Sequence record: NC_047815.1
DNA: 64,000 bases
Reading direction: 5' to 3' (one strand)
Made by a program: the position numbers and the translations under genes. Position 1 is the stretch's first letter. The number at the start of each line of letters is the position of its first letter. Below are positions 38,207-52,425 of the stretch, one piece after another. A model generated the notes under the pieces. The model had not been told where the DNA came from, searched no databases, and was given only the letters and a program-made list of their open reading frames with translations.

Positions 38207-38214
38207 AACGACCT

Positions 38215-38616: not shown

Positions 38617-38659
38617 TTAGAAACCAAGCAAGTGGCCACATGAGCCACCCGCCTGACGG

Positions 38660-38899: not shown

Positions 38900-38936
38900 T
38901 GTGTTGCCCTCTGTTGTATTGTAGCTTTAAATTATA

Positions 38937-38960
38937 AAGGGACAGCCGAAGCCGTCCCTT
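38937..38960 (-). terminator. intrinsic terminator with C(UUCG)G loop
   Basis: Minus strand AAGGGACGGC-TTCG-GCTGTCCCTT, right after the stop at 38965. Confidence 0.7.
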
Positions 38961-38964
38961 GTTT

Positions 38965-39588
38965 TTAGTTTAGCTTGATACGCAAATCACTGAGGTTGAT
39001 ACTACGACTCTGATCAGTAATGTCCGCGCTGTTGGCATAAACACGACCACCTTTAATACGCAGATCAGCAGTAGAGTTTTCATCACCAACAGTACCGAAC
39101 ACACCAAACACAACGTTTGTACCATTACCAGTAAGCGGGTTATCAAGCGTAATGCTTGATGCAGGTAGAGCGGCTAACACAAACCACGTAGGCGTTCCAT
39201 CTGCTAAGATATAGCTAGCTCTCGGGCTTTTTGAAGGTCCGAACGACGCACCACTGATTGCAGCAGAGTTAATGCGAGCAACAATTCTACCAACGTCTGA
39301 TTCGAACGTACCATCGAAACGAGTACGACCTGTAACAGCACCTAGATAGTCACCCACACGGGGCATGATAACATCTTGATAGTTCAAGTATGGCTCGCGG
39401 TTAGCAGAACCTGTATCGAGAATGTTAGGCGCGTTGAGTGCTGCATTCACTGTAGCATAATCAGGCACTGTTCCCTTGTATAGAAACAGTGCCCAACTCA
39501 GGTTCGACGTTGTGCTTGCGGCAGCCGAGGAGATTTCCCCGATAGCACCTAAATGCAGCGCAGCCGCAGTGCCTTTACTAAATTTCAT
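38965..39588 (-). CDS. putative virion structural protein (paralog array)
   Basis: LFLYKGTVPD...GTPTWFVL...GTVGDENSTADLRI; AAGGAG RBS. Confidence 0.6.
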   Translation of the reverse strand: MKFSKGTAAALHLGAIGEISSAAASTTSNLSWALFLYKGTVPDYATVNAALNAPNILDTGSANREPYLNYQDVIMPRVGDYLGAVTGRTRFDGTFESDVGRIVARINSAAISGASFGPSKSPRASYILADGTPTWFVLAALPASSITLDNPLTGNGTNVVFGVFGTVGDENSTADLRIKGGRVYANSADITDQSRSINLSDLRIKLN

Positions 39589-39589
39589 A

Positions 39590-40471
39590 TCAGGCTCCTT
39601 GACGCACAGCGGCTTTGATGGGAATCGACCAGTCTTGAACAGCAACGTGTCCGAACTTGCCTGTCTGCACAGTGTCTAGCTTTAGGTCTGTGCCTACATC
39701 AAGAATTAATGACAGGTAATCCATCTTTGTTGTGTCAATAAGGCCAGCATAGCTTGTTGCAGCTAGCTCTGGTACAAGCACGCCGTGAGTGATAGGCCGC
39801 ACGGAGAACTCGGTACCACGCTCTGCCCAGAACATCATACTCGCAGTGCCCGTGCTCGTTGTTGTGGCATTAACGATACGTACTTTGCGTGCAGTGAAAT
39901 CAAACTGATATTCACCGTTAGCCAGACTTGGTAAGGCCTGAGTCCACGTAACACCATCAGCAGCCAGATAGTACAGCACCGATGTGGAAAAGTTGGAACT
40001 TGAAAACACAGTAATACCACGAAAGCGCAGTGTCCGCCCGAAGTCCAGCGTTGTTTGACCCGCAACTTGAAGACCCGTCATGCTTGGCCCGTAGTCACCA
40101 AAGATACCAGCACGTTGTGCATATTGAGCAGGAGTCTGCACTGTTGCCGTGTTTTCAATCAACACAGTTTCAGGCACAACGTGATATGCAAGAACTTGTT
40201 GACTGCTTACCGTGTAGGTACGACGCTGACCATATCCGCCGACAGGCTGCAAGCTACGCGCACGGCCATAGGTACGACGTAACAATGCATCATTACCGGC
40301 AGTCTGTGCTCGATATGCGATAGATACAGCAGCAACGGAACTAGCAGCTAAATCTTGTAGCTTTTGTGGTACTGTATCGCTGCTTCCTGTACGCAAGAAC
40401 AGGGTGGCACCGTTAGATGACACATAGCCGTTTAGAAATCGGTACAGCGCGTACTTGTCTGAGATTAACAT
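39590..40471 (-). CDS. putative virion structural protein (paralog array)
   Basis: LFLRTGSSDTVP N-terminal block, LDFGRTLRF beta domain, ILDVGTDLKL C-terminal block. Confidence 0.6.
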   Translation of the reverse strand: MLISDKYALYRFLNGYVSSNGATLFLRTGSSDTVPQKLQDLAASSVAAVSIAYRAQTAGNDALLRRTYGRARSLQPVGGYGQRRTYTVSSQQVLAYHVVPETVLIENTATVQTPAQYAQRAGIFGDYGPSMTGLQVAGQTTLDFGRTLRFRGITVFSSSNFSTSVLYYLAADGVTWTQALPSLANGEYQFDFTARKVRIVNATTTSTGTASMMFWAERGTEFSVRPITHGVLVPELAATSYAGLIDTTKMDYLSLILDVGTDLKLDTVQTGKFGHVAVQDWSIPIKAAVRQGA

Positions 40472-40480
40472 ACACGCTCC

Positions 40481-41002
40481 TTACAGATTGACTTGCAGAT
40501 CAGTAAAGCGATAGCTCTGACCAGAAGTTACCACACCACCAAGAATACGCAGCTCCGCATCTGATGTATCACTGCCTACAGTAAGAACTAAGGCGTTTAA
40601 AACGTTAACACCGTTTGCAAGTGCTCCTGCATAGGTATCAGCAGAGCCAACAGCACTGCCTTGACGAATCACAGCATAAGTAGGAGTACCGGACGCAACA
40701 GCAGGCATACTTGCAGTCAGTGCGCTGAGTCCTAAACGCCACACGTTCATCATTGGATCGTAACTTGGCGTCATTTGAGGCACGCGCTGTACGGCCAAAC
40801 AGTTTTCCGCTGTAGCACCCAACGCAGTCATAAAGTTAGCAGCAGTGATTGTGTTGTTTGCTGTCAATGCAGCAACAGCAGCATCCAAATCAGGCACGGC
40901 GCCTTTAAACAGGCCGATAGTGGTGAAGTTAGCTGAGGTAGTGAACATAGCCTGTAGCGTTGCGAATGCTAAACAGCTATTTGCACCTTTGTTGTTATTC
41001 AT
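40481..41002 (-). CDS. putative virion structural protein (paralog array)
   Basis: IGLFKGAVPD...GTPTYAVI...LTVGSDTSDAELRI; clear paralog of 38965..39588. Confidence 0.6.
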   Translation of the reverse strand: MNNNKGANSCLAFATLQAMFTTSANFTTIGLFKGAVPDLDAAVAALTANNTITAANFMTALGATAENCLAVQRVPQMTPSYDPMMNVWRLGLSALTASMPAVASGTPTYAVIRQGSAVGSADTYAGALANGVNVLNALVLTVGSDTSDAELRILGGVVTSGQSYRFTDLQVNL

Positions 41003-42060
41003 ACTGGACTCCCTACAACTGACTTGATCGTAGCAAAGATGGTTGGCGGATTGATCTCTGTGCCTGGAACAACAACAGCGTTAGGCATATAGATGTCCTT
41101 TGTACCAGCAGCAGTCAGATCTTTGGTAAAGCTGAAACCGTAAGTGGCATAATTGTTGCTGTAGTTTGCAGCAGCCATGCCTTCAGTTGTGCTGAAACCT
41201 GTGGAAGCATTTGCACCACCACCAACAAGAACAACGTGTCCGATTTCAGGAATAGTGCGGAAGTCAGTACCTGATGTGTACTGTCCGTAGAAGTTCAGAC
41301 TAAACTGCACAAAGCCATAGCTGGCATTGACTTGATTGCCCAGACCTTTCTTGTTGACGATACGCCACTTCTGAGCAGACACAGCAGCAGGTAATGTATA
41401 CGTCTTTTCCGTGGTGCTTGATACGGTAGTCAGGTCTGTTGTACAACTGGCAACATCCGTCCACACAGCACCAACAAGAGCCTGAACAACGTTGTCATTT
41501 GCCGTTTTAACTGACGGGAACACGTTGTAGTTGTTGCTGTTTTGCTGTGTAAGACTGCCCAGACTTGTTACAGTTACAGCAGCGCCAAAATCGTACTGAG
41601 CAATGATACCATAGCCTTCTTCTGTGGCATAAGTATCAGCAGGACGCATGTACAAGGCAGTTGCAGGATAATACCCGATTTCAGCGCGATGCCACATGAT
41701 CGTGTTGTGAACCCAGTCCGAATAGCTTGCAAGCAGTGCGGAGTTAGCTGCAACACGAGGCAGTCTGCCACTCACGCGCACATCAGGGAACAGGCGACGA
41801 CGACCATCGGCTTGTAAAACACTTACTTGTGCAGGGTTAGTAGCACCACAGACTGCGCTGGCTGTGCGATCAACAGGCGCAAAGTTGAAGCTGCCTACAG
41901 GTGCTGTATTGATTGTACGCACAAACCACTTTGTTGTCAGTGCTTTGTTGTAGAGGTCTTGCATTGAATAAGCCAAAGGATTTGGCAGTTCACCATCAAG
42001 GAACATAGCCTGATAGTAACGTGTTGCTTGCTGCGCTAGCGTTAGCGGTAAAATCTTCAT
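40999..42060 (-). CDS. putative virion structural protein (paralog array)
   Basis: MFLDGELP N-terminal block; central YDFGAAVTVTSL...AQKWRI discoidin-like domain. Confidence 0.6.
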   Translation of the reverse strand: MKILPLTLAQQATRYYQAMFLDGELPNPLAYSMQDLYNKALTTKWFVRTINTAPVGSFNFAPVDRTASAVCGATNPAQVSVLQADGRRRLFPDVRVSGRLPRVAANSALLASYSDWVHNTIMWHRAEIGYYPATALYMRPADTYATEEGYGIIAQYDFGAAVTVTSLGSLTQQNSNNYNVFPSVKTANDNVVQALVGAVWTDVASCTTDLTTVSSTTEKTYTLPAAVSAQKWRIVNKKGLGNQVNASYGFVQFSLNFYGQYTSGTDFRTIPEIGHVVLVGGGANASTGFSTTEGMAAANYSNNYATYGFSFTKDLTAAGTKDIYMPNAVVVPGTEINPPTIFATIKSVVGSPV

Positions 42061-42071
42061 CGGTTGCTCCG

Positions 42072-42632
42072 TTATTTAATCACAATGCTGTTCAGCGTCA
42101 GCGGGCTATTCAATGTACCAACACCATTCGCATCAATGGTAATGTCTGCACCCATCGCTTTTAAATCAGCAGGCGTAAGCTCAATCATACTCGAAATGCC
42201 AGTACTGGTTGAGATGGAAGTGGCATTGGTGATCATGATGTACATGCGAGTAAACGCTGATGCATACGTGAAATAGCCCAGCGTGTTATCCACAAAATCA
42301 ACAGTGCGTTGACCTTCTTGAAACAGCAATCGAGCTGGACCTGTTGAGGCAAATGTTGTAGACCAAGTAACATCGCTGCGATTAGCTATGGTCCACGTGC
42401 GGATAGCAGCCAAGCTCATAACAGAAGCTTGGATTGCCATCCAATCAGTGTCAGTTAACGCAGAGCCTGAACTGAATGCAACGCCACACGCACGCTCTAA
42501 TCCGACAGGTGCTTGCAGAGGCATTGCTTGGTCAGCAATAAAAACTGGAGACCAGAAGTAGTCTGCGGCTAGTGATGAATAATTACCGCTAGGTCGCTGG
42601 CGAATGTTTTGCAATGCTTTGGAGATAAACAT
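42072..42632 (-). CDS. putative virion structural protein
   Basis: AAGGAG RBS; C-terminal LNSIVIK end similar to array members. Confidence 0.55.
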   Translation of the reverse strand: MFISKALQNIRQRPSGNYSSLAADYFWSPVFIADQAMPLQAPVGLERACGVAFSSGSALTDTDWMAIQASVMSLAAIRTWTIANRSDVTWSTTFASTGPARLLFQEGQRTVDFVDNTLGYFTYASAFTRMYIMITNATSISTSTGISSMIELTPADLKAMGADITIDANGVGTLNSPLTLNSIVIK

Positions 42633-43525
42633 TAAGCACTCCTTGGCAAGAAACGAATCTTGGGACAATAGATGATGTTTGCCTTGTTACCAGCAAAGGG
42701 ACCAACTACATTGAACGGACCACTAGCGCCTACTGCATCTGCGAGATACATAATGCTGTCTGAGCCTTCAAAATCACCATGCACAAACGTGTTAGCGTGA
42801 GCAAGCACAGCCCAAGTAGGCAATGCAAGTTCAGTTGCTGTAGGCATGGTAGTATCGCTGAGTAGCGCAAACGGTGCGTGCAAGGTGTTTGCCGCGTACT
42901 TGAGACGGAATCGTTTGGCCGTCTGAGGGTTGGCAAATGAATACACACTAGCATCCCCTGAAACTACAGGGCGATTGCCTAGACTTGTCTCAACACCGCT
43001 GTCGTCTACAGCGACGATTACGCCAGACAACGGACTTGAGCCAAATAGTTTGATGTGACTGACACGCACTGCCTGATCAAACTCTACAGTGAAGTCCTCA
43101 GTACCAACCGTAGTGGAGTAATCACCAACGGCACTTGGTGCACACACGATACGGCTGATAGCTCGGTCAGTTGATCCTGTACGCGTCACACGATTAGGCA
43201 GCAACTGACTTAAATTCAGCGTTCCCACTGTTCCATACAGACTTGCACCTTTAGGTACGTAAGGAGCACGGGGGCGTAGATTAAGAATCGTACCGTTACT
43301 TACGCTGAGTAGCGGATTACGTACAATGCCCAAAGAAGCGTTGAACAAGTCAGCAACACTACGCTGGTTAAACACAGCAGCCATCTGAGATTCAGTTGTA
43401 GGCATTGTGCCTGACATAAGAAACAACGTCCAACCCCCAGAGTGAGCGGGATCGTCGTAGCCAACAGCAGTACCGCTTGTACCGAAAACAGCTTGCGCCA
43501 TGATTGCGCTGTTAATCAATTTCAT
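42632..43525 (-). CDS. putative virion structural protein (paralog array)
   Basis: LFLMSGTMPT N-terminal block; VEFDQAVRVSHI...AKRFRL; PTWAVL. Confidence 0.6.
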   Translation of the reverse strand: MKLINSAIMAQAVFGTSGTAVGYDDPAHSGGWTLFLMSGTMPTTESQMAAVFNQRSVADLFNASLGIVRNPLLSVSNGTILNLRPRAPYVPKGASLYGTVGTLNLSQLLPNRVTRTGSTDRAISRIVCAPSAVGDYSTTVGTEDFTVEFDQAVRVSHIKLFGSSPLSGVIVAVDDSGVETSLGNRPVVSGDASVYSFANPQTAKRFRLKYAANTLHAPFALLSDTTMPTATELALPTWAVLAHANTFVHGDFEGSDSIMYLADAVGASGPFNVVGPFAGNKANIIYCPKIRFLPRSA

Positions 43526-43526
43526 G

Positions 43527-43925
43527 TTAGCCCACCACTGGAGTTGTTGATGAGTTAGTGGCGTTTGTTTCGCTGAGATCAAACGACGATACGTTTACGC
43601 GAACAACAGGGTTATCTTGCGCTGGGTATTGCACAGAAGCATTCAAGGCAGGACCGTAGTTACCAGCCAGCTTGTATGTTGACTGTTCTGCCTGACCTAT
43701 ATCAACGCTGTCAAACGAACGAGACTGAAACCCAGACCATACTTGATTTGGATAAGTCTCGGTCAGCGTGCTGTTGTTGGTAACGGTCTGATTGCGAATC
43801 TGTGTAGGCACAAGTGACACAACACGAGCAAGTGCCTGTGAGTTGTCGCGTGTTTCAAAATCACTGAGTACAAACGTGTTCGCAACGAAGTAGTCAGGAT
43901 CATACTGAACAACATTTATGATCAT
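43527..43925 (-). CDS. putative virion structural protein
   Basis: AAGGAG RBS; within the array. Confidence 0.55.
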   Translation of the reverse strand: MIINVVQYDPDYFVANTFVLSDFETRDNSQALARVVSLVPTQIRNQTVTNNSTLTETYPNQVWSGFQSRSFDSVDIGQAEQSTYKLAGNYGPALNASVQYPAQDNPVVRVNVSSFDLSETNATNSSTTPVVG

Positions 43926-44977
43926 AAGAACACTCCTTGACGCACACGGAAGTTATCAATAAACGGATGCACTGTGGCATCATATGCGCCACTGCCGCCG
44001 ATACGATGAACAGTGGTATTGGGCTTGATGTTCACGTAGGTGAAGCTATCCACCAGCTGATCATTGATAAACACTCGGTGAAGGTTTGTCGTCGCATCAT
44101 ACACATACTTGACTGTGACAAACGTTGTACTTTTCAGCGCGGCGTAGTTATCAATAGGACGACTTACTTTTGCAGTAACAGCCTGATTCCAAATAGCAAA
44201 TTGATTTTGACCTGGCTCCAGACCAATAGCCCAGCGAACTGTTGTGCTAGAAAATAGAGAGAAGAAACTAAAGTCAGGAAACTTAGTCGTAGCAGACTGT
44301 CTGTATTTAAAATCAATGGTAAAGCTCTGTGTAACGTCAAGACCCGCAGTGCTTGTAGTCATTGCTGGGTTAGCGTTGTTCATATCAATACCGTTACTGG
44401 TATCTGCAACGGTACCAGCTTGCACTGAGATTACATTGCCTGCATAGTCATTGAAACCCGCACCGTAAAACACAGTGCTGTCAATGGCAAGCAATTCATT
44501 ACCTGCAAGCCAGCTAGACAGACCAAGAATGTTTGTCATCGACAGATTAAATGCAGGACAGTATACAACAGAACCTGCTGCGGTAACGTCGATAACAAGC
44601 TCTGAGTTAGGATAAAGCAAGTTGACGTCCGTACCAATTTCAAGAGCGATAGGCAAGATACCGCCAAGAACGATGTGCGTCGGACGACCTGTTGCTGTGG
44701 TAGTAATGTTGATCTCGCTGACGGACAACACGTTGTTAGCAAAAGCACGAGTACAATCCGTGCTTGTGCCCAACAGTGTGCAGATGCCTGACATTCGTGT
44801 TGTATCAAACGAATAACCAGCACCAGTCGCATGATAGTTGAGACAGGCATTCAGATCTTTTACCGTCTTGCCTAAGGCCAATGCAACCAAGTACACGTTC
44901 TTTGTGTCGTAGGTTGTTGAACCGAACAGGCGACTAAGCTGATTCAGCATCGGCACGTTAAAGAGTTTCAAGTTCAT
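43922..44977 (-). CDS. putative virion protein with C-terminal LamG/concanavalin-like domain
   Basis: TGRPTHIVL...EIGTDVNL block, then FTIDFKY...VKYVYD...HRVFINDQLV...RIGG...IDNFRV. Confidence 0.65.
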   Translation of the reverse strand: MNLKLFNVPMLNQLSRLFGSTTYDTKNVYLVALALGKTVKDLNACLNYHATGAGYSFDTTRMSGICTLLGTSTDCTRAFANNVLSVSEINITTTATGRPTHIVLGGILPIALEIGTDVNLLYPNSELVIDVTAAGSVVYCPAFNLSMTNILGLSSWLAGNELLAIDSTVFYGAGFNDYAGNVISVQAGTVADTSNGIDMNNANPAMTTSTAGLDVTQSFTIDFKYRQSATTKFPDFSFFSLFSSTTVRWAIGLEPGQNQFAIWNQAVTAKVSRPIDNYAALKSTTFVTVKYVYDATTNLHRVFINDQLVDSFTYVNIKPNTTVHRIGGSGAYDATVHPFIDNFRVRQGVFL

Positions 44978-45945
44978 TATGAAATCTCCGTAGCTGTGCT
45001 TACTTGGCTAACAGTTGCATATTCACCAACGCCTAAAGTTGTTTTTTGGAGTTCAATCAGCGTACCAGCACCAGTTGCACCTACCGCACAAGCAAAGTAT
45101 TGCACATCACCCAAACCAGCAGCAAGCGCACCGTAGTTTGTGTCAGTGATGGTCACAATCGCCCACTTGATTGTGACGTTACGTGAAGCAGGGTTTGTAT
45201 TGCCCTGAGTAGCAGGCAAACCACGACGCGCTGTACCCACTGTCTGACCGATACGAAAACGAGTGGCAGATGCTGGTGGTGTAGCAATCACGTTACCTTC
45301 TTGATTAGCTGCAATAGACCACGAACTAGCAGTGCCCAAAGTCGTAGACATACCATTTGCGTCTTGAGCAGTAACAGGCGTGATTGTACCGCTAACAGCA
45401 GCAGTGAGGTCGGGCCCAGGCGCAACAAAAGCATCGATAACAACAGCACTGTCAAACTCAACATCGGCTGCGCTCACACTTGCTAGTGGTTGTTGTTGCG
45501 TGTCCAGTGGAAAGCCCGGATATTGCTGAGGTCTGCGTGTCAGATTGCCCAGCAGTCGCTTGTTACCCGTTACTGCGCTGCTTACGTAGCCTGTAGGAAC
45601 GTCAGTGCCAGCGGCTGTGTAACCAATTGGCTGAATGTCCTTAGGGTAATGCAGGGTAACACCCATCTGGGCTTTGTACACACTGCCGCTGACAGCCTTA
45701 AACCCAACTGACTGGTCCAGCATCAAAGTCAAGCCTTCTGTTTCAGGACGCAGTTTGATTTCAGTAGCAGCAGCACATCGACGCAGCAACTGGCGGAAGT
45801 CAATCAGATACTGAGAGAAGTTCGTAGGCATATCTTCTGAGAAAAAGAAGCATTCAGCTACGATACCGTTCGATGCAGTTGCAGCCCAAGCTGAGGACTG
45901 TTGCGCTACACTGAACGGCAATAAGTTGTGACCTAAAAGGCGCAT
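44977..45945 (-). CDS. putative virion structural protein (paralog array)
   Basis: FFFSEDMPT; VEFDSAVVIDAF...ATRFRI; IKWAIV; AVGATGAGTLIEL. Confidence 0.6.
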   Translation of the reverse strand: MRLLGHNLLPFSVAQQSSAWAATASNGIVAECFFFSEDMPTNFSQYLIDFRQLLRRCAAATEIKLRPETEGLTLMLDQSVGFKAVSGSVYKAQMGVTLHYPKDIQPIGYTAAGTDVPTGYVSSAVTGNKRLLGNLTRRPQQYPGFPLDTQQQPLASVSAADVEFDSAVVIDAFVAPGPDLTAAVSGTITPVTAQDANGMSTTLGTASSWSIAANQEGNVIATPPASATRFRIGQTVGTARRGLPATQGNTNPASRNVTIKWAIVTITDTNYGALAAGLGDVQYFACAVGATGAGTLIELQKTTLGVGEYATVSQVSTATEIS

Positions 45946-46439
45946 TAGAACTCCTTACTATCACGCACAACACTTGCCAAGAAGCGACCATTCTTGAGAT
46001 TAGCCGCTGTAAGAATAAGGTCTGCACCAGATCCAGCAGCACCAATCGTTAGAATAAGGAATCCACCGTAAGGCGTGCTAGAAATATCTTTGTTAAACAC
46101 AATGACGTTGTACTGCGCAAGCAAGTCCGTGATGGTACCAGCGAAAGTTCCACGCAGTGTAGCAGCCAGTTTAAACTTCAAACGGTTGCCCGAAGCATGA
46201 ATCCAACGCACAGGGCTAGCTGTGAGACTTGTGAGATCAAGACTTGCAGTAGCACCAATAGCTGTGAGACTTGTACCTGAGGAGACTACGACGTTGGCAG
46301 GGTCTGGGACTTTTGCAAGACACACAGTAAACTGCATGTTGTCTAGTCCGTATTTTAATGGCGGATCTGTTGCATCGCGCTTGCCCTCATCTGGAATAGT
46401 AATCCCGTTGGCGACGAGGGGAAATGAAATGATTTCCAT
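45945..46439 (-). CDS. putative virion structural protein (paralog array)
   Basis: VCLAKVPD...ILTIGAAGSGADLIL; AGGAG RBS. Confidence 0.6.
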   Translation of the reverse strand: MEIISFPLVANGITIPDEGKRDATDPPLKYGLDNMQFTVCLAKVPDPANVVVSSGTSLTAIGATASLDLTSLTASPVRWIHASGNRLKFKLAATLRGTFAGTITDLLAQYNVIVFNKDISSTPYGGFLILTIGAAGSGADLILTAANLKNGRFLASVVRDSKEF

Positions 46440-46465
46440 TGCGTTTCTCCTGGGTTAATCTCGTT

Positions 46466-46474
46466 TAAATTACT
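46466..46474 (-). promoter_or_regulatory. candidate late-promoter motif AGTAATTTA
   Basis: Intergenic, about 27 nt upstream of the 46439 start. Confidence 0.4.
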
Positions 46475-46483
46475 GTGAACTGC

Positions 46484-47560
46484 TTACAGAGAAAATAGTT
46501 GGTTCGACTGAGGTAGGTCTTGCAGGTTGGACTTAACTTGAGGTAATGTAGCCACCGCGCTTTGACCTGTCTGAATCAAGTCCTGCACAAAATCAGCGAT
46601 CTGAATATACACGCTATTGTCAGGCATCAGCACTGGCATGAATGCGTGATCAAACAGATAGCTTGGTGTATTTGTCTGGCTGTTTCCCTTGCTGTAGAAG
46701 CGATGTGCATCAATGCTTTTGTTCAAACTAAGTTGACGACTACGCGTAGTCGTATAGTTCCAACCTCCACCTGAGAAATAGCGTGTGCCATACCTACTCC
46801 AATAATTACTAAACACAAGACGGGCAGTAGTGGCGTTGGCTGCAACTTGACTACTAACAACATACTCCTGACCAGCGGCATAGTTACTAAGAATTGTAGC
46901 ATTGCCATAATAAGTAATCTGGCCTGCATTGTTTGCTGTCTGATACCACGTCTGAATGTAACGTGCTGTTCTGCTTTCGTAGCTACCAATAGTTCCGATA
47001 CTACCACTAGCACTAGTGCTGTTGGTAATCGCTTCATCGACTGTATCGAACACTTGACCATCTATCACACTGCCTTCAAAATGAGGCAGAATCATCGTAG
47101 GAAAGCGTACTACCATAGCTGTGGACACGTCTTCATACTTATCGGCTGCTGTATCGTGTAATGTTCCTGTATCAGCAACAAACCCCAATCCAGGCTGAGG
47201 TGCCGAGCCTATACTATACATTCTCTTGAATGCACTCAGTTCCGAGTAAGCAGTTAAAGCCATATTCAGATACAGCGTACTGCCGCCGGAGTCTTCATCG
47301 GACCAATCATAGCGCATTGGTCCCACAAGCGTATGGAAATAGTGATTGCCTGCCCAGCCAGCAGCTCGCGTACACAGCATTGAGTTATCACTCTGCTTGC
47401 CGTGAATAAAGCTGCGTGCTTTATCTATCTTGGCCATGAGAGAGGCAAGACTATCGGATGCTGTCGGTCTAGCCACATCACTAGTAATCAAAAACATGCG
47501 TTTACGTGCAACGTTGAGGTTATCCGTTACAAGTTTTGCTCCCTGAGATATGAATTGCAT
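46484..47560 (-). CDS. MQF-family paralog 1 (putative virion fibre/surface protein)
   Basis: MQFISQGAKLVTDNLNVARKRMFL...MLCTRAAGW. Confidence 0.6.
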   Translation of the reverse strand: MQFISQGAKLVTDNLNVARKRMFLITSDVARPTASDSLASLMAKIDKARSFIHGKQSDNSMLCTRAAGWAGNHYFHTLVGPMRYDWSDEDSGGSTLYLNMALTAYSELSAFKRMYSIGSAPQPGLGFVADTGTLHDTAADKYEDVSTAMVVRFPTMILPHFEGSVIDGQVFDTVDEAITNSTSASGSIGTIGSYESRTARYIQTWYQTANNAGQITYYGNATILSNYAAGQEYVVSSQVAANATTARLVFSNYWSRYGTRYFSGGGWNYTTTRSRQLSLNKSIDAHRFYSKGNSQTNTPSYLFDHAFMPVLMPDNSVYIQIADFVQDLIQTGQSAVATLPQVKSNLQDLPQSNQLFSL

Positions 47561-47568
47561 AACGACTC

Positions 47569-48642
47569 CTAAATATCGAACACAGTTTCATTGCTCATAA
47601 AATCTGTGTTGGCCGTGATGATGAGCTTTGCTGCTGCGGCGACAGGCGCTGAACCAGATTGAACAAGTTCTTTATCCTGCCCGACATAGGCACGCAACAT
47701 ACAACTGTCTGGACCGCACTTGAACACTGCTACTGCTTTGACAAACACAGCATCAGAGTCGTCAGGTAGAGCGGCGTCAGCCGCTAGACGCATAGCGAAA
47801 GCATCAGCACTGTCACGCGTAAATCCTGTATTGCCTGTAGTAGCATACAACGATCCTACAGCACTGTAGCTATATTGATTAAGACCGTTGGCGGAGTATC
47901 TGTGGCTGATCGGTCTGACAAACAACAGATTATTATTGGCCGCAGTTAGACTAGGTATATTAGGAGATACAGTTGGTACGGTAGTGCTCTGAATTACTTG
48001 GCCTGAAGACACCACTTCCTTGAGTGTTGACATATCTAGATTAGCATTACAGTAGCCACCGTCGTCGCCAGTAGCAGTTTTCCAAAAGCTATCCACAATG
48101 CGCGTGTACATGCTTACGGCACGGCTGCTGTATGTATACAGTTTGTTATCACCAGACAGCTTTTTATTTTGTGGCACAAGCATCATGCAACTAGAGGGCC
48201 AGTATTTACCTAAAGAAGTTTCTGTGCTTGGTCCGTTTTGACCCGTGAATACTGGATAAGTGACGTCTGCCCAATCTTGACCATCCGCGCTTGGTTGAAC
48301 AGTGAAATATCTGTCTACCACTTGCTTGACCGTCATCGTAGTAGAATTGGACCCATACACATTCGCACCTGTTGTTGCAGTAGCGTTGTTGGTCAATGCG
48401 GGGCTTTTAGCAGGATAGTAATAGTCACCAAGTTTCCCACTGACTGGCGTTGTCTCAGCAGCACCTGTTGCGGTATCACTGTTGTTGATGTACGCACGAG
48501 CATTCACGGCGGCAGCTAAGAACTGATCATAACCTAAATGCACGTCTGCAACAGATTGAGTGCTGTCAAACAGTAATGCTGTATTTAGGGCCTGTCGTGA
48601 CATTGCGTTTGACATGGGCCCACGTCGTGTCACAAATTGCAT
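47569..48642 (-). CDS. MQF-family paralog 2
   Basis: MQFVTRRG...ALLFDS...GKLGDYYY; GAGGT RBS. Confidence 0.6.
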   Translation of the reverse strand: MQFVTRRGPMSNAMSRQALNTALLFDSTQSVADVHLGYDQFLAAAVNARAYINNSDTATGAAETTPVSGKLGDYYYPAKSPALTNNATATTGANVYGSNSTTMTVKQVVDRYFTVQPSADGQDWADVTYPVFTGQNGPSTETSLGKYWPSSCMMLVPQNKKLSGDNKLYTYSSRAVSMYTRIVDSFWKTATGDDGGYCNANLDMSTLKEVVSSGQVIQSTTVPTVSPNIPSLTAANNNLLFVRPISHRYSANGLNQYSYSAVGSLYATTGNTGFTRDSADAFAMRLAADAALPDDSDAVFVKAVAVFKCGPDSCMLRAYVGQDKELVQSGSAPVAAAAKLIITANTDFMSNETVFDI

Positions 48643-48649
48643 AACTACC

Positions 48650-49687
48650 TCACATAATAAATTTGCTTCTAACTTCCCGAGCAGTAAAAGCATTCATAGA
48701 CAGAGAAGGCTTAACTCCTGCAGTGGTCAAACCTTCTTGCGTGAAATCTTCATCTGCTTTAACAATAATTGCGTAGATGGGGCCAGACTCATCTGTACCG
48801 CTGATAGGCATCATTCCCCACTCGATAGAATAGTCTTGAGTGTCGGTCATGTTAGACTTCGTACCAAACAAAATATCAGCGTCGGCTGCTACGGGAGCAG
48901 TCATTCTTGGGCCATTAACGTTATTCGTTGTATTGGAAATAATACTCTCCGAATAAGCACTGCGCCCTATAGTCTGAGTTTGTGTAAATGCACCAAACAA
49001 TCTAGGACCTACGATAGATGAATCTGAGGCATAAGAAGAACCTGAAAATGTGTTTACTTTTTTTGTTATTGTAGATGATTCGCCAATAGCAGTTACTTGA
49101 ACATATGTCATAAATGTATTGACGGTTTCTGTGTATCTGCCGGTTACTATTCCAAGACTTGTTGTAGTTGACCAAGATCTAGAGCTTGACATAGTTAAGT
49201 TTGATGATGGAATTGTACTAAGACCATAGTTCAAGGCACTACCATCAAATGGAGGTAATACCATAACGTTTCTTGACGGTGCAATCTGAGTCTCATTTGC
49301 AAGTGTCTCCAGAAGGCTACCTGTCCCTGAATATTTCGATCCAGCGTTCGGACGCCCGACGCTGTAGAAGCGGGAAAATATATCAAACAGCGACACTGCT
49401 TTAGAGCCAGACACCGAGTCTACTACTGTATCTGTAGGCAACACAGCAGGGACATAGTTGTAATACAGACGATTATTTTTCCAACCAGCAGCACGTACAC
49501 AGTTCATTGAAAGATCTTCATTAACTGTGGCGCAGAAACAACGACTGGCGTTTATTTTGTTGATAAGGTCAAGCATACTAGAATTTTCATCAGGCACAAC
49601 AATATCGTCGGAAAATAAAAACATTCTTTGCCGAGCAATATTAATCTTATCTTCTAATAGTTTTGCTCCAGCTGAAATGAATTGCAT
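48650..49687 (-). CDS. MQF-family paralog 3
   Basis: MQFISAGAKLLEDKINIARQRMFL...MNCVRAAGW. Confidence 0.6.
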   Translation of the reverse strand: MQFISAGAKLLEDKINIARQRMFLFSDDIVVPDENSSMLDLINKINASRCFCATVNEDLSMNCVRAAGWKNNRLYYNYVPAVLPTDTVVDSVSGSKAVSLFDIFSRFYSVGRPNAGSKYSGTGSLLETLANETQIAPSRNVMVLPPFDGSALNYGLSTIPSSNLTMSSSRSWSTTTSLGIVTGRYTETVNTFMTYVQVTAIGESSTITKKVNTFSGSSYASDSSIVGPRLFGAFTQTQTIGRSAYSESIISNTTNNVNGPRMTAPVAADADILFGTKSNMTDTQDYSIEWGMMPISGTDESGPIYAIIVKADEDFTQEGLTTAGVKPSLSMNAFTAREVRSKFIM

Positions 49688-49696
49688 AACATATCC

Positions 49697-50668
49697 TTAT
49701 AAATCATAAACACGTTGCTGTGCAAACTTAGGAAAATCCTCAATAGTACCTGACATGGATGTACCCGGATACGCGGCAGGAAAAGAGAAGTCCACGTCTG
49801 CCTCAAGTTTTAGCACGAACAAATGTTCTGGCGTTACGAAAAACGACAATCCTTTGACCAACACAATTGGTGCAGGGTCTTTATCAAGGAACGCAGTGAC
49901 ATAAGGTACGTTCGGCAATTGATTGTATTGCTTAACTGGCGGCGACGTTCTCGTCGGGTCATACACATCAGATGACCAGTTAAAGCCGACACCTCCATTT
50001 GTTGTTAGCGTCTGAGCGATATTCAACGCTTTAGTAATCCCTGACTCGCTTGATGTATATGACATAACGGTCGAATTAACTGTGGTAGTTACCGCGTTTG
50101 TCAGTATTTCTGAACGCTTGTGTTGGACACTACCACCACTCTGACCGCCAAACGTCTTATTCACCGCACTGGACATAGCTGGAGCTGCATACCCCCTAAG
50201 TCCGGAGGTAACAACTGTTCCTACCTTTGTTGGCCACAAACAAGTTATACCTTGAGAATAAACAAAATCGCTTTTTCTCAAGCCAAACATCTGAGTATCA
50301 GAAGTTTCGTCACTGATTGGTGCATCTACATTATTTTGATTATTTGTTCTGTCTCCTGTACCCAACACAGTAGGAACAAACGTTCGCAAAAATTCTCTAT
50401 CAGAACTGAAATCAGGCAACACACCTACAAATCCAATACGAGTCAGATAAAGATTTTGTACTCCACTATTACCTATAGGATTGTCTGCTATTCCAAGCAT
50501 TTCACTCATTACAACAGTGTCGCCTTCGAGCTTTAGCGGTGTAGACCGTGTATTACGCAGTATCTGAACCAACTGACTGATTGTTGTGAACTCAGTGTTG
50601 GTTGAGGCGTCAAAGAAATAACTGTACTTTTTAAGGTCCTGATCACCTTTAGGTAGAATGAGTTGCAT
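49697..50668 (-). CDS. MQF-family paralog 4
   Basis: MQLILP...YSYFFD; similar size and C-terminal layout. Confidence 0.55.
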   Translation of the reverse strand: MQLILPKGDQDLKKYSYFFDASTNTEFTTISQLVQILRNTRSTPLKLEGDTVVMSEMLGIADNPIGNSGVQNLYLTRIGFVGVLPDFSSDREFLRTFVPTVLGTGDRTNNQNNVDAPISDETSDTQMFGLRKSDFVYSQGITCLWPTKVGTVVTSGLRGYAAPAMSSAVNKTFGGQSGGSVQHKRSEILTNAVTTTVNSTVMSYTSSESGITKALNIAQTLTTNGGVGFNWSSDVYDPTRTSPPVKQYNQLPNVPYVTAFLDKDPAPIVLVKGLSFFVTPEHLFVLKLEADVDFSFPAAYPGTSMSGTIEDFPKFAQQRVYDL

Positions 50669-50677
50669 AGTCTTTCC

Positions 50678-51769
50678 TTATAGCACATAAACAGCGTCAG
50701 AAATAAACTTGGACAGATGCAAATCAATCGAGGTCTCTTCGTTTGGTAGGGCTGGTGTGCTGTGCGTAAAATCGTTCTCATCCAATACAGCCACCTTGAG
50801 TTGACCCTCGTGGCGAACTGCAAGCATTGCCCATTTCAGCGTTGTTGCCGCAGTGTCGTCTGCCTCACGTTCAACAAAATAGTTACCACTTCCAGTAAAA
50901 TCAGTGGCAACAGGACTTGCTGGACTATAGATACTGACACCACCACGAAGTAAACCACCAGCAGCTAGACCAAAATCTCTAGCATCTGTCGTGCTCCCTG
51001 CCTGTGTTATACAGCCTGACACCTGTAAAGATATGCCTTTCTTCACCAACGCATCACATATAATATTTACACCCTGTACAAGACTGTTTGCGATGCGCGA
51101 TGCGCCGTATGCATACTGTTTGCCGTCACGCACTTGGATAAAATCCATGTTGTAGTAATCGTAATAGCGACGACCGATCAAGCTAAAGTCACCCCAACCA
51201 TAACTGGATGTGGCTTTAGATACATCAAACTTTATTGCACTGGTTAAGTCAAAGGGAATACACACGATAGAACTGTCGGGATATAGCTGGCCAGTAGCAG
51301 CGTATTGTGGATTCTGTGCAACATCTTTATCCTGATTTACTGGATGCAGAAAGCTGTAACCGAATGTTTTAATCAAGCTGTTTCTAGGTACAGTTGGAAA
51401 AGCAGTTGATGCAAACTTTTCAATAGCCTGCATGTCGGTAATAGCTACATCAACTCGGGCATCTGTATATGATGTACTGTACAGGGTTGGTCCACGATTT
51501 CCGTTGTTGTTGGATGTTGTTGCTGCCAACGTTTTTGTATCTACTCCAGCACTACGCGCGAAATAATATCTACCGTCTCGCTGACCGCTGAGACGAGTAC
51601 ACTTTACCTTATCTTCTTGAACATCATAACCACAAGTACGAGCTTGCGTAATCTTGTCCAAATACTCTGAGGCAGTAATAGACGTAGGTTTCTCTACCGT
51701 GTCATCAAAATAGAACATACGTTCCGGATAAACGTTTGGGACAGCTAGAGAAGACAGTGCAAATTGCAT
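50678..51769 (-). CDS. MQF-family paralog 5
   Basis: MQFALSS...ERMFYFDDTVEKPT...DKITQART...KCTRLSG...YYF. Confidence 0.6.
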   Translation of the reverse strand: MQFALSSLAVPNVYPERMFYFDDTVEKPTSITASEYLDKITQARTCGYDVQEDKVKCTRLSGQRDGRYYFARSAGVDTKTLAATTSNNNGNRGPTLYSTSYTDARVDVAITDMQAIEKFASTAFPTVPRNSLIKTFGYSFLHPVNQDKDVAQNPQYAATGQLYPDSSIVCIPFDLTSAIKFDVSKATSSYGWGDFSLIGRRYYDYYNMDFIQVRDGKQYAYGASRIANSLVQGVNIICDALVKKGISLQVSGCITQAGSTTDARDFGLAAGGLLRGGVSIYSPASPVATDFTGSGNYFVEREADDTAATTLKWAMLAVRHEGQLKVAVLDENDFTHSTPALPNEETSIDLHLSKFISDAVYVL

Positions 51770-51831
51770 AAATAAATCCCTCGTAAGCACAAAAGGGCAG
51801 ATACCTCTCGATATCCACCCTTGATAAAGCA

Positions 51832-52413
51832 CTATACCAGCAAACGACCTGCGATGGTCATTGCAATACCACTGATTGTGCTGTCCACAGTTGCGGGTGC
51901 AGTAATCTTTAGCTGATCACCAGATACCAAAATGATTTCTGCGTCAACGTAAGCAGGTTCAGCAGCAAACACACCTGTCTTGCTGTTGGCGGCGAAAGTT
52001 ACTGTACCAATCTTGACCATTGTACCACTGGCGGCATCCATAACACGGATATCAAACACAGTTGCAGCCGTAGCAGCAATGTCTGCAACAGCCATACTAC
52101 CTGCGAAATTTTTAGCAATAGCAGTTGAGCGAACGCTGAGGTAACGTGCTACTTCGGCAGATGCTGCGTATCGTTTTAATAGGCTTACTGCAACGTCATA
52201 GGGATTGACTGATTGAAGCTGCGACACCCACTTAGCACGCGATGTGGAATACACATACAGGCCAGGTTGGTTCTGACCATTCACAGCAGTCAGATACCAG
52301 ATTTGACCATTCTGTGGGTTAGCGGGAAACGTTGCACCGCTTGTAGTAGGGTCACCAGGCGCACGTAGAATCTGAGCAGCAGGTCCTACTAATTGAATAC
52401 CAAAGGCATACAT
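51832..52413 (-). CDS. putative tail/fibre-associated structural protein
   Basis: FPANPQNGQIWY motif; C-terminal FAGSMAVA...GTVTFAA...GDQLKI beta domain. Confidence 0.55.
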   Translation of the reverse strand: MYAFGIQLVGPAAQILRAPGDPTTSGATFPANPQNGQIWYLTAVNGQNQPGLYVYSTSRAKWVSQLQSVNPYDVAVSLLKRYAASAEVARYLSVRSTAIAKNFAGSMAVADIAATAATVFDIRVMDAASGTMVKIGTVTFAANSKTGVFAAEPAYVDAEIILVSGDQLKITAPATVDSTISGIAMTIAGRLLV

Positions 52414-52425
52414 AAACTATTCCTC

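What the first reader, a model, noticed from the sequence alone, without database searches (positions are those of the whole stretch)
38965..51769. 13-kb tandem array of about 15 related putative virion proteins with conserved ends and swapped middles
Most genes share an N-terminal 'hydrophobic-F/L-x-x-G/D-x-x-P' block and a C-terminal 'PTW/Y/H-hydrophobic...T/D-VG/IG...D-L-x-L' block. Short members (164-207 aa) are nearly only these blocks, while long members insert different beta domains (discoidin-like xFDxAVxV...A-x-RFRI, LamG, or unknown). This looks like a modular scaffold displaying varied binding domains, possibly the hair-like fibres of hairy jumbo myoviruses or a multi-receptor or glycan-binding coat. 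I saw no reverse transcriptase or invertase, so diversity seems to come from duplication and domain shuffling.
Basis: partly seen in the sequence, partly recalled or inferred. Interest (0 to 1): 0.7.

Follow-up and report, generated by a model that had tools for sequence, protein, structure and literature searches.

The report
Garland-like tail accessory protein gene array
A jumbo fire-blight phage carries a 15-gene operon of distant relatives of the small 'garland' proteins that wrap phage tail-fibre tips; many carry sugar-binding or unknown inserts that are swapped between close relatives, so it is most likely a variable host-surface-binding part of the tail, not a new kind of system.

Summary
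The window is Erwinia phage vB_EamM_Yoloswag (bases 1-64000). The finding covers gp84 to gp70: 15 intact, tightly packed minus-strand genes between two terminator-like hairpins, just downstream of the tail-fibre genes.

They are not one family by ordinary criteria. Profiles give four families: A (gp70, gp72), B (gp71, gp73), C (gp75, gp78) and D (gp80-84). gp74, gp76, gp77 and gp79 stand alone.

The N-terminal block links A, B, C and D above controls. The C-terminal block links A, C and gp79.

Family A is homologous to the garland proteins of Agrobacterium phages Milano and 7-7-1 (hhalign 90.5%; Foldseek hit to 9RKV chain A). These are small virion proteins that wrap distal tail-fibre ends.

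Verdict: observation partly confirmed, interpretation partly supported. This is a new variant of a known kind. Virion location and any role as 'hairs' remain untested.

The parts
51793..51822 (-). Terminator-like hairpin (AAGGG..CCCTT) between gp85 and gp84; upstream boundary of the array unit
   Evidence: 13-bp stem; one of 5 such hairpins in the window (0.28 expected), all at the ends of gene blocks
50678..51769 (-). gp84, 363 aa, family D (shares the N-terminal ~100 residues with gp80-82; different body)
   Evidence: hhalign to gp80/81/82 97-98% over residues 1-72..119; alignment A4
49697..50668 (-). gp83, 323 aa, family D (shorter subtype)
   Evidence: hhalign to gp82 96% over the full length and to gp80 94%; 97% identical in close relative L016
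48650..49687 (-). gp82, 345 aa, family D; scaffold is residues ~1-110 plus ~282-345; inserted long-strand beta domain is residues ~111-281
   Evidence: AF2 pLDDT 87.2, pTM 0.83; no PDB fold match; ends 86-97% but middle 34-62% identical in L016
48845..49355 (-). Exchanged cassette inside gp82 (the middle beta domain): no nucleotide similarity to the otherwise 95-96% identical relative
   Evidence: gap in the blastn alignment between L016 and the window; per-decile identity
47569..48642 (-). gp81, 357 aa, family D; start at 48642 (MQF.., as in its paralogues) rather than the annotated 48615
   Evidence: hhalign to gp82 99% and gp84 98% over the N-terminal ~150 residues; Shine-Dalgarno-like site and alignment A4
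46484..47560 (-). gp80, 358 aa, family D; the whole gene is replaced by a different D member in the close relative
   Evidence: hhalign to gp82 100%; 22% identity to the gene at the same position in L016, which shares only the N-terminal ~85 residues with D members
45945..46439 (-). gp79, 164 aa, short member; C-terminal block like family A; by far the most conserved gene of the array (75-89% between genera)
   Evidence: family A C-block HMM z 8-9 at the correct position; merged A+garland profile 24%, E 8e-4; conservation; no transmembrane-grade segment
44977..45945 (-). gp78, 322 aa, family C: N block, discoidin-like middle (by motif), C block
   Evidence: hhalign to gp75 76%, and the two merge on HMM iteration; blocks; alignment A8
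43922..44977 (-). gp77, 351 aa: N-terminal domain (1-153) plus mobile LamG-like C-terminal domain (154-351)
   Evidence: Pfam Laminin_G_3 in 4 of 11 orthologous domains, best E 1.6e-5; the domain is fused to the gp78 orthologue in JA13 and is a stand-alone extra gene in pEa_SNUABM_7; Foldseek probability 0.54 to the gp72 model
43527..43925 (-). gp76, 132 aa, conserved small gene with no detectable link to the other members
   Evidence: 1:1 orthologues; no hit in any profile or block test
42632..43525 (-). gp75, 297 aa, family C: N block, discoidin-like middle (by motif), C block
   Evidence: family A N-block z 4 and C-block z 5; hhalign A3 to gp75 23%; alignment A8
42072..42632 (-). gp74, 186 aa, short member linked to family A by predicted fold only
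   Evidence: Foldseek/BFVD: a Yoloswag 186-aa protein at probability 0.92 and the JA13 197-aa orthologue at 0.98 against the gp72 model
40999..42060 (-). gp73, 353 aa, family B: N block, CBM32/discoidin-like middle, C-terminal region; stop overlaps the gp72 start
   Evidence: hhalign to gp71 93%; Pfam F5_F8_type_C in 6 of 21 family members, best E 2.5e-6; family profile hits CBM32 5zu6_A at E 0.0048
40481..41002 (-). gp72, 173 aa, family A: bare scaffold, garland-protein homologue
   Evidence: hhalign of the family A profile against the garland profile 90.5%, E 1.3e-6, full length; Foldseek 9rkv_A E 2e-4, probability 1.0; AF2 pLDDT 62.7, pTM 0.65
39590..40471 (-). gp71, 293 aa, family B (shorter subtype with CBM32/discoidin-like middle)
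38965..39588 (-). gp70, 207 aa, family A: bare scaffold with a short insertion just before the W-strand
   Evidence: hhalign to gp72 99%, E 9e-21; alignment A1; Foldseek E 2.4e-6 to the gp72 model
38937..38960 (-). Terminator-like hairpin just after the gp70 stop; downstream boundary of the array unit

Best explanation
**What it is.** The stretch is one transcription unit of Erwinia jumbo phage Yoloswag (gp84 to gp70). It lies directly downstream of the tail-fibre genes and upstream of a small block of membrane and lipoprotein genes.

**The scaffold.** Its products are built on a scaffold of about 170 residues. The N-terminal part is helix, strand, G/D-x-x-P, helix. The C-terminal part is a 'W-strand' followed by a hydrophobic strand ending in VG and an acidic D-L turn.

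**Shown.**
- In its bare form (gp70, gp72) the scaffold is homologous to the garland proteins of Agrobacterium phages Milano (gp125/gp127) and 7-7-1 (gp014, PDB 9RKV chain A). Those are small virion proteins that, as dimers, wrap the distal ends of tail fibres and tailspikes.
- gp79, gp75 and gp78 carry the same end blocks. gp74 has the same predicted fold.
- gp71 and gp73 carry a CBM32/discoidin-like domain between the blocks. By motif, gp75 and gp78 probably do too.
- gp77 carries a LamG-like domain that moves between array genes in related phages.
- gp80-84 share an N-terminal module and a C-terminal region that flank a variable all-beta domain without a solved relative.
- That middle domain (gp82), or the whole gene (gp80), is exchanged between phages that are otherwise 95-96% identical at nucleotide level.

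**Inferred.**
- All of these are late virion proteins. They assemble through the scaffold into homo- or heterodimers that decorate or bridge the tail-fibre network, either as a garland or as hair-like appendages.
- The inserted lectin-like domains give multivalent, reversible binding to host surface polysaccharide.
- Recombination at the conserved ends retunes that binding.
For: **Identity and context.**
- The window is Yoloswag.
- Tail-fibre families lie immediately upstream: gp93-95 and gp88.
- Terminator-like hairpins bracket the array.

**Family A and the garland proteins.**
- The family A profile (58 sequences) against a garland profile scores hhalign 90.5%, E 1.3e-6, with 135 co-linear columns covering both end blocks. 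The garland profile was built from 7-7-1_000103 and 000105, Milano_125 and 127, and two Rhizobium phage genes.
- The family A profile against 7-7-1_000105 alone scores 72%, E 3e-5, and 0% against 14 other 7-7-1 structural proteins.
- Foldseek of the gp72 model against the PDB gives one significant hit, 9rkv_A (E 2e-4, probability 1.0).
- That chain is the 141-aa gene next to the long tail-fibre gene, i.e. garland protein gp014. The GenBank record labels it 'structural protein'.
- The Milano paper describes gp125/gp127 dimers enveloping the distal ends of tailspikes and short fibres, with a fold like T4 gp8 and A511 gp105.

**End blocks shared beyond family A:**

**Same order of secondary-structure elements in the gp72 and gp82 models.** The D insert sits just before the W-strand, where gp70 also has a small insertion and where B and C have their middle domains.

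**Binding-type domains.**
- F5_F8_type_C in 6 of 21 B members.
- CBM32 5zu6_A at E 0.0048.
- Laminin_G_3 in 4 of 11 gp77 C-domains.

**Modularity and exchange.**
- The LamG-like domain is fused to another array gene in JA13 and stands alone in pEa_SNUABM_7.
- The gp82 middle and all of gp80 are replaced in L016.
- The B-A pair occurs 2, 3 or 4 times, and D genes 0 to 5 times, in relatives.
- An unrelated-lineage contig (L020) has six long paralogues with the N motif plus one short A member at the same locus.

**Soluble proteins with no defence signature.** None has a signal peptide or transmembrane segment, and there are no PADLOC hits for the ten members scanned.
Against: - No virion proteomics or structure exists for Yoloswag or its clade in what I could read. 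Virion location rests on homology of family A alone.
- Full-length profile comparisons do not unite the families.
- Family D has no Foldseek similarity to 9rkv_A or anything else. Its link to the rest is a weak N-block signal (15%, z 5-7) plus the order of secondary-structure elements.
- The gp72 model is only moderately confident (pLDDT 62.7), and TM-scores to 9rkv_A are 0.36-0.43.
- A511 gp105 appears only at E 1.2.
- Yoloswag's own gp71, gp73 and gp77 do not reach Pfam significance; only orthologues and the family profile do.
- gp76 is unexplained.
- The block z-scores use shuffled decoys and related orthologues, so they overstate independence. Controls reach z 4-5.
Confidence: 0.6

Rival explanations
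1. The proteins are virion appendages, but not a baseplate garland. They polymerise like beads on a string into the thin 'hairs' seen along the sheath (or capsid) of hairy myoviruses, with the lectin-like inserts pointing outward.
For: [quoted passage not shown]
- The hair proteins are unidentified even in the better-studied Rak2-like lineage.
- According to the Milano paper, proteins of the related fold in A511 form a chain of three dimers 'like beads on a string'.
- The 10-gene core is conserved across the clade.
Against: - No data place any of these proteins on the sheath or capsid.
- The solved homologue sits at the distal fibre ends.
- Yoloswag's own morphology was not described in what I read.
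- The garland family also occurs in non-hairy phages (7-7-1, Milano, Rhizobium phages).
Confidence: 0.2
2. The short members (gp70, gp72, gp74, gp76, gp79) are tail-fibre assembly chaperones for the long members encoded just upstream of them, and are absent from the mature particle. Only the long members are receptor-binding proteins.
For: - Gene lengths alternate: gp73-gp72, gp71-gp70, gp75-gp74 and gp77-gp76 are long-short pairs with overlapping or abutting stop and start codons.
- The B-A pair is duplicated as a unit.
- Chaperone genes typically follow fibre genes (general knowledge).
Against: - The homologous short proteins of 7-7-1 and Milano also follow a fibre gene, yet are present in the virion and were modelled in the map.
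- No Pfam or PHROG chaperone family is hit.
- Short and long members share the same end blocks, which is not expected of a chaperone and its client.
Confidence: 0.1
3. There is no single system. The stretch is a run of unrelated, fast-evolving late genes, some with lectin domains, and the shared motifs are convergent features of beta-rich proteins.
For: - Full-length hhalign and iterated HMM searches keep four families and four singles apart.
- PHROGs splits them.
- Family D has no structural match to family A's solved relative.
Against: - N-block enrichment against the rest of the window, p = 1.8e-5. Block-level hhalign above 32 controls, p = 5e-4.
- The motif is always at the same position.
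- The insertion point is the same in B, C, D and gp70.
- The genes form one unit between two hairpins.
- Long and short members co-occur again in an independent lineage.
- A domain moves between members.
Confidence: 0.07
4. The products are non-structural: secreted or intracellular proteins acting on the host envelope or against host defences.
For: - All are annotated hypothetical.
- A membrane/lipoprotein gene block follows the array.
Against: - None has a signal peptide or transmembrane segment.
- No PADLOC hit for the ten members scanned.
- Family A is homologous to a protein modelled in a virion map.
- The array sits inside the tail-fibre region.
Confidence: 0.03

Closest known systems
Garland proteins of Agrobacterium phages: Milano gp125/gp127 and 7-7-1 gp014 (PDB 9RKV chain A; GenBank 7-7-1_000103 and its paralogue 000105)
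   Same: - Family A (gp70, gp72) matches over its full length in profile-profile comparison: 90.5%, E 1.3e-6. It also matches in fold.
- Both carry the N block (hydrophobic-Y/F-x-G-x-x-P) and the C block (G-T-x-T-W-F ... D-L-K-L).
- Both are encoded in the tail-fibre region and occur as paralogue pairs.
   Different: - Two paralogues of about 140 aa there. Here there are at least five to seven members with the blocks, within a 15-gene unit.
- The bare members here are larger (164-207 aa).
- Most members here carry inserted or appended domains (CBM32-like, LamG-like, unknown beta), which the known garland proteins lack.
- Dimerisation and location are unknown here.
T4 gp8 and Listeria phage A511 gp105 (baseplate wedge 3 - tail fibre network connectors)
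   Same: According to the Milano paper, the garland fold resembles these dimeric connectors. By transitivity, the scaffold here may belong to the same fold class. In A511 they form a chain of dimers.
   Different: - The link is not shown here: A511 gp105 (6hhk) appears only at Foldseek E 1.2, TM 0.24-0.26, and T4 gp8 was not returned.
- Those proteins sit next to the baseplate, not at the fibre tips.
CBM32 / F5/8 type C (discoidin) and Laminin_G_3 (concanavalin-like) carbohydrate-binding modules
   Same: - Family B's middle domain hits F5_F8_type_C (6 of 21 members, best E 2.5e-6) and a solved CBM32 (E 0.0048).
- The gp77 C-domain hits Laminin_G_3 (4 of 11, best E 1.6e-5).
   Different: - Very divergent: the Yoloswag copies themselves do not reach significance.
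- In B and C the domains are embedded inside another fold rather than appended to an enzyme.
- Ligand-binding residues were not examined.
Receptor-binding protein cassettes of tailed phages with a conserved N-terminal anchor and an exchangeable distal part (general knowledge: T-even fibre tips, multi-tailspike phages)
   Same: Family D shows a conserved N-terminal ~85-110 residues, a variable body, copy-number variation (0-5), and clean replacement between phages that are 95-96% identical at nucleotide level.
   Different: - In gp82 both ends are kept and only the middle is exchanged.
- The predicted fold is not a trimeric fibre or beta-helix, and it has no PDB match.

Membership tests
Garland protein family (Milano gp125/gp127, 7-7-1 gp014) | Sequence homology over the whole protein to known garland proteins | tested here: met
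   Met for family A (gp70, gp72): hhalign of the A profile against a 6-sequence garland profile gives 90.5%, E 1.3e-6, 135 columns. Against 7-7-1_000105 alone it gives 72%, E 3e-5.
Garland protein family (Milano gp125/gp127, 7-7-1 gp014) | Fold matches the solved garland protein (9RKV chain A) | tested here: met
   The gp72 model has one significant PDB hit, 9rkv_A: E 2e-4, probability 1.0, TM 0.36/0.43. Caveat: model pLDDT is 62.7. Chain identity was inferred from length and gene order.
Garland protein family (Milano gp125/gp127, 7-7-1 gp014) | The same homology for the other array members | tested here: inconclusive
   - gp79: 24%, E 8e-4 against the merged profile.
- gp75 and gp78: block level only.
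- gp74: Foldseek only.
- B: weak.
- D, gp76 and gp77: not detected.
Garland protein family (Milano gp125/gp127, 7-7-1 gp014) | Forms homo- or heterodimers | not testable with these tools
   No multimer prediction is available. Only monomer models were made.
Garland protein family (Milano gp125/gp127, 7-7-1 gp014) | Present in the virion around the distal ends of tail fibres or tailspikes | not testable with these tools
   No proteome or map for this clade was found. The Y3 paper is not held.
Garland protein family (Milano gp125/gp127, 7-7-1 gp014) | Gene lies next to a tail-fibre or tailspike gene | tested here: inconclusive
   The array is in the tail-fibre region, downstream of gp93-95, gp97 and gp88. 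However, each A gene directly follows a family B gene, not a recognised fibre gene.
F5/8 type C / CBM32 carbohydrate-binding module | Profile match to the domain family | tested here: met
   Met at family level for B: Pfam F5_F8_type_C in 6 of 21 members, best E 2.5e-6, and the family profile hits CBM32 5zu6_A at E 0.0048. gp71 and gp73 themselves give no Pfam hit. Family C has motif resemblance only: B-middle against C-middle 5.9%, E 0.006.
F5/8 type C / CBM32 carbohydrate-binding module | Carbohydrate-binding site or ligand | not tested
   No residue-level comparison or structure of the B family was made.
Laminin_G_3 / concanavalin-like lectin fold | Profile match to the domain family | tested here: met
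   Met at family level: 4 of 11 gp77-type C-domains, best E 1.6e-5. The Yoloswag copy itself gives no hit.
Diversity-generating retroelement target genes | Template/variable repeat pair and a reverse transcriptase nearby | tested here: not met
   No near-identical DNA repeats in 38000-53500. No such family appears among the Pfam or PHROG hits of the genes scanned in 37.4-62.6 kb, i.e. most but not all genes there. The rest of the window was not scanned for a reverse transcriptase.
Tail-fibre assembly chaperones | Match to a known chaperone family | tested here: not met
   No Pfam or PHROG chaperone hit for any member.

The most novel reading that the evidence does not exclude
The array encodes the long-unidentified subunits of the 'hairs' of the Yoloswag/Y3/AD1/JA lineage of hairy myoviruses. 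Garland-fold dimers would string together into flexible filaments that display CBM32-like, LamG-like and a structurally new beta domain. The gp80-84 zone would act as an exchangeable specificity cassette.
Probability: 0.2. Interest if true: 0.75.

Novelty: new variant of a known kind. Interest (0 to 1): 0.55.

Why it matters
- Garland proteins were recognised only in 2024-2025, as a pair of small decorations on two Agrobacterium phages. This locus suggests that the same scaffold has been expanded into a 10-15 gene set in a whole clade of plant-pathogen jumbo phages.
- The scaffold appears to tolerate domain insertion at one point, just before the W-strand.
- One sub-family is exchanged between phages that are otherwise 95-96% identical at nucleotide level, which is the signature of a host-recognition determinant.
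- The locus gives named candidates for two open questions: what hairy myovirus appendages are made of, and what sets adsorption specificity in these phages. Both can be addressed by virion proteomics and cryo-EM.
- The middle domain of gp82 is a confidently predicted fold with no solved relative.

Tried and rejected
- **Frameshifted gp76/gp75.** Rejected: both genes are separate and conserved in all relatives.
- **One homogeneous paralogue family.** Rejected by BLASTP, iterated HMM search and full-length hhalign.
- **Recent tandem duplication or a diversity-generating retroelement.** No DNA repeats apart from an 81-nt, 72%-identical 5' stretch shared by gp80 and gp82.
- **Direct Pfam annotation of the Yoloswag proteins.** Nothing at E < 0.04.
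- **PDB sequence searches with the A, C, D and gp77-domain profiles.** Nothing significant.
- **Word-indexed homologue search.** It reached only the same clade.
- **Exhaustive representative search with the family A profile.** It found 59 representatives, all 62-213 aa and nearly all 160-213 aa. No long members were found this way.
- **Foldseek of the confident gp82 model against the PDB.** No match. I chose the PDB over the viral library for the last search, so cross-hits of family D to other array members in BFVD were not tested.
- **7-7-1 middle gene 000104 and Milano_126.** No relation to any array family.
- **Defence-system models.** No hits.
- **gp79 as a membrane protein.** Its most hydrophobic stretch is the C-block strand and contains an Asp.
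- **Literature.** No virion proteome or structure for this clade was found, and the Y3 paper is not held.

Full report
**Identity and anatomy**

The window is bases 1-64000 of Erwinia amylovora jumbo myovirus vB_EamM_Yoloswag, KY448244.1 (100% identity). The finding's coordinates are exactly gp70 to gp84, all annotated hypothetical except gp79, which is annotated 'putative membrane protein'. The 15 genes are intact, on the minus strand, and either overlap by 1-4 nt or lie about 10-60 nt apart.

A hairpin of the form AAGGG..CCCTT lies just upstream of gp84 (51793-51822). Another lies just after the gp70 stop (38937-38960). Five such hairpins occur in the window against 0.28 expected, each at the end of a gene block. 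I therefore read the array as one transcription unit.

- Upstream on the same strand are gp85-88 (gp88 belongs to a 'virion structural protein' PHROG) and the tail-fibre genes gp93-95 and gp97.
- Downstream are four small genes, including a lipoprotein and membrane proteins.
- No array protein has a signal peptide or a transmembrane-grade segment.

**Are the 15 proteins related?**

By ordinary criteria they are not one family.

- BLASTP finds only gp70-gp72, gp75-gp78 and gp80-gp82-gp84.
- I built per-gene alignments from nine related phages. Full-length hhalign on these gives:
  - Family A: gp70 and gp72 (99%).
  - Family B: gp71 and gp73 (93%).
  - Family C: gp75 and gp78 (76%).
  - Family D: gp80-84 (mostly 94-100%, but gp81-gp83 24% and gp83-gp84 47%).
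  - Everything else is near zero.
- Iterated HMM searches and merged-family profiles do not change this.
- PHROGs also keeps them apart.

**The end blocks are nevertheless real**

- *N block, literal motif.* It occurs in the first 70 residues of 7 of 15 array proteins, always at residues 19-34. It occurs in 1 of 63 other ORFs of the window (p = 1.8e-5).
- *N block, cut-out profiles* (hhalign):

| Pair | Probability |
|---|---|
| A-C | 76% (E 2e-5) |
| B-C | 16% |
| C-D | 15% |
| A-B | 9% |
| A-D | 3% |
| B-D | 0.3% |
| Maximum of 32 controls | 4.4% |

  Mann-Whitney p = 5e-4. Block HMMs scored against shuffled decoys agree, with C as the hub.
- *C block.* It is shared by A and C (52%, E 1.5e-4) and by gp79 (z 8-9; 24% against a merged profile). 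It is weak in B and undetected in D.
- *gp74.* It joins by fold only: two independent BFVD models, Yoloswag 186 aa and JA13 197 aa, match the gp72 model at probability 0.92 and 0.98.
- *gp77.* It has only a weak fold signal (0.5). gp76 has none.

The z-scores overstate independence, because orthologues share ancestry and controls reach z 4-5. I lean on the consistent positions and on the control comparisons.

**What the scaffold is**

- AlphaFold2 on gp72 gave a moderate model (pLDDT 62.7, pTM 0.65).
- Its only significant PDB match is 9rkv_A, 'Agrobacterium phage 7-7-1 tail fibers' (E 2e-4, probability 1.0, TM 0.36/0.43).
- The 7-7-1 paper and genome record identify a 141-aa gene directly after the long tail-fibre gene as garland protein gp014, annotated 'structural protein'. 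Thirty-six polypeptides form dimers around the distal baseplate and touch the lower parts of the short and long fibres. I assign the 139-residue chain A to gp014 by length and gene order.
- Its paralogue 000105 (31% identical) is hit by the family A profile at 72%, E 3e-5. Fourteen other 7-7-1 structural proteins score 0-2%.
- A six-sequence garland profile (7-7-1, Milano gp125/gp127, Rhizobium phage RHph_N46) matches the 58-sequence family A profile at 90.5%, E 1.3e-6. The match covers 135 co-linear columns and aligns both the N block and the C block.

The Milano paper reports that gp125/gp127 dimers envelop the distal ends of tailspikes and short fibres. It also reports that the fold resembles T4 gp8 and A511 gp105, which are connectors of the tail-fibre network. 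Here A511 gp105 appears only at E 1.2, so that further link is taken from the literature and is not shown.

An exhaustive search of 1.84 billion representatives found only 59 family A relatives. All are 62-213 aa and nearly all 160-213 aa.

**The inserts**

- *Family B.* A middle domain lies between the blocks. It hits Pfam F5_F8_type_C in 6 of 21 members (best E 2.5e-6), and as a profile it hits a solved CBM32 (5zu6_A, E 0.0048).
- *Family C.* It shows the same motif pattern at the same place, but reaches only 5.9% (E 0.006) against B's middle and gives no Pfam hit.
- *gp77.* The C-terminal 200 residues hit Laminin_G_3 in 4 of 11 orthologous domains (best E 1.6e-5).
- *Family D.* It has conserved ends and a gappy, variable middle.
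  - The gp82 model is confident (pLDDT 87.2, pTM 0.83).
  - It begins with the same helix-strand-helix order as gp72 and ends with four strands that parallel gp72's C block.
  - In between is a domain of long beta strands.
  - It has no PDB fold match: best E 0.023, TM at most 0.14.
- *Common insertion point.* In B, C and D, and in the small insertion of gp70, the extra material sits just before the W-strand.

**Evolution**

- gp70-79 have 1:1 orthologues in the same order in Rivsvirus, Sasquatchvirus, Alexandravirus, Snuvirus and Salmondvirus. Identity is 24-78% between genera, but 75-89% for gp79 among the Erwinia-phage and AD1 genera (54% to Salmondvirus JA13).
- The B-A pair occurs twice in Yoloswag, three times in Y3 and Alexandravirus, and four times in a metagenomic relative.
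- D genes number 0 to 5.
- The LamG-like domain is fused to the gp78 orthologue in JA13 and is an extra stand-alone gene in pEa_SNUABM_7.
- In a metagenomic phage 95-96% identical to Yoloswag at nucleotide level, 16 of the 18 genes compared (gp66-83) are 94-100% identical in protein. The two exceptions are in family D:
  - gp82 is 70% identical, with ends at 86-97% and middle at 34-62%.
  - gp80 is 22% identical.
  - The nucleotide alignment simply stops over window 48845-49355 (the gp82 middle domain) and over 46478-47545 (all of gp80).
  - The replacement gene at the gp80 position is another D member that shares only the first ~85 residues.
- The only DNA repeat in the array is the 81-nt 5' end shared by gp80 and gp82 (72% identical). 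It is a plausible substrate for such exchange.
- A contig of another lineage (L020) has six 400-431-aa paralogues, all with the N motif, followed by one short A member. These sit downstream of proteins whose sizes and C-terminal sequences resemble gp87, gp86 and gp85 (resemblance by eye only). Their profile matches C at 57% (E 1e-4), D at 4% (E 0.01), and A and B at about 2%. Controls score 0.2-0.3%.

**Interpretation**

The best reading is a tail-associated set of garland-type proteins, some bare and some carrying lectin-like or novel beta domains, with a fast-exchanging sub-zone (gp80-84).

*Shown:*
- Homology of family A to garland proteins.
- Shared blocks in C and gp79.
- The CBM32-like and LamG-like domains, at family level.
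- Domain mobility.
- Cassette replacement.

*Inferred:*
- Virion location of all members.
- Dimeric assembly.
- Glycan binding.
- A role in adsorption specificity.

*Rivals:*
- Hairs rather than a garland. This is plausible, because the clade is 'hairy' and the hair proteins are unknown.
- Chaperones for the short members.
- An unrelated gene run.
- Non-structural proteins.

I found no evidence for a defence or counter-defence role.

**Novelty**

This is a new variant of a known kind. The scaffold family and the idea of modular receptor-binding cassettes are known. The scale of the expansion, the internal insertion point, the mid-gene exchange and the unmatched gp82 domain are not described in the literature I could search.

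**Limits**

- Only two structure predictions and three fold searches were available.
- Family D was not searched against the viral structure library.
- No multimer modelling was possible.
- The Y3 paper, which might contain virion data, is not held.

Noticed in passing
window 30458-30481, 37385-37413, 38937-38960, 51793-51822, 53284-53307: A family of GC-rich hairpins beginning AAGGG and ending CCCTT: 5 copies against 0.28 expected. Each lies at the end of a gene block, and one lies between the convergent genes gp65 and gp66. They are probably this phage's intrinsic terminators.
   Followed up: partly
window 47569-48642 (gp81): The GenBank start (48615) is probably 9 codons too short. The upstream ATG at 48642 has a Shine-Dalgarno-like site and gives the MQF.. 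N-terminus shared by the D paralogues.
   Followed up: partly
window 45945-46439 (gp79): The 'putative membrane protein' label is probably wrong. The most hydrophobic 19-mer (Kyte-Doolittle 1.67) is the C-block strand and contains an Asp. gp79 is also far more conserved (75-89% between the Erwinia-phage and AD1 genera) than its neighbours in the array (roughly 25-78%), which is unexplained.
   Followed up: partly
window 37419-38899 (gp66-gp69): A small unit after the array, ended by its own hairpin. gp66 has a lipobox signal peptide, a coiled, charged middle and a C-terminal hydrophobic segment. gp67 and gp68 have transmembrane-grade segments. This looks like a lysis or envelope-acting cassette (spanin-like?).
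   Followed up: no
window 52426-54918 (gp86, gp87, gp88); also gp93 at 57405-58226: gp86, the middle of gp87, the C-terminus of gp88 and part of gp93 share one short domain (hhalign gp86-gp87 92%; cross-hits among PHROGs). One of those PHROGs (24148) is labelled 'HNH endonuclease', which looks like a mislabel for a tail-fibre-associated domain.
   Followed up: no
L014 (Dickeya phage JA13) 10875-12449; L005 (pEa_SNUABM_7) 12511-13158: The LamG-like domain of gp77 is found fused to the C-terminus of the gp78 orthologue in JA13. In that phage the gp77 orthologue carries a different C-terminal half. The domain is also an extra stand-alone 215-aa gene in pEa_SNUABM_7.
   Followed up: yes
L020 (Logan SRR22137104 contig, 42.7 kb) 2376-10549: An unrelated-lineage phage contig has six tandem 400-431-aa paralogues (22-35% identical), all with the N motif at residues ~24-35, followed by one 182-aa family A member. 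They lie downstream of proteins whose sizes and C-terminal sequences resemble gp87, gp86 and gp85 (judged by eye).
   Followed up: partly
L018 (Rhizobium phage RHph_N46) 4737-5609; L017 (Milano) 3157-4532: Garland-family paralogue pairs also occur in ~193-kb Rhizobium phages, directly after a 694-aa DUF1565 (pectin-lyase-like) protein. So the family regularly follows a receptor-binding gene.
   Followed up: partly
window 59526-64000 (gp96, gp98): The GenBank notes mention intein domains in gp96 and gp98, next to the large tail-fibre-region proteins. I did not examine this.
   Followed up: no
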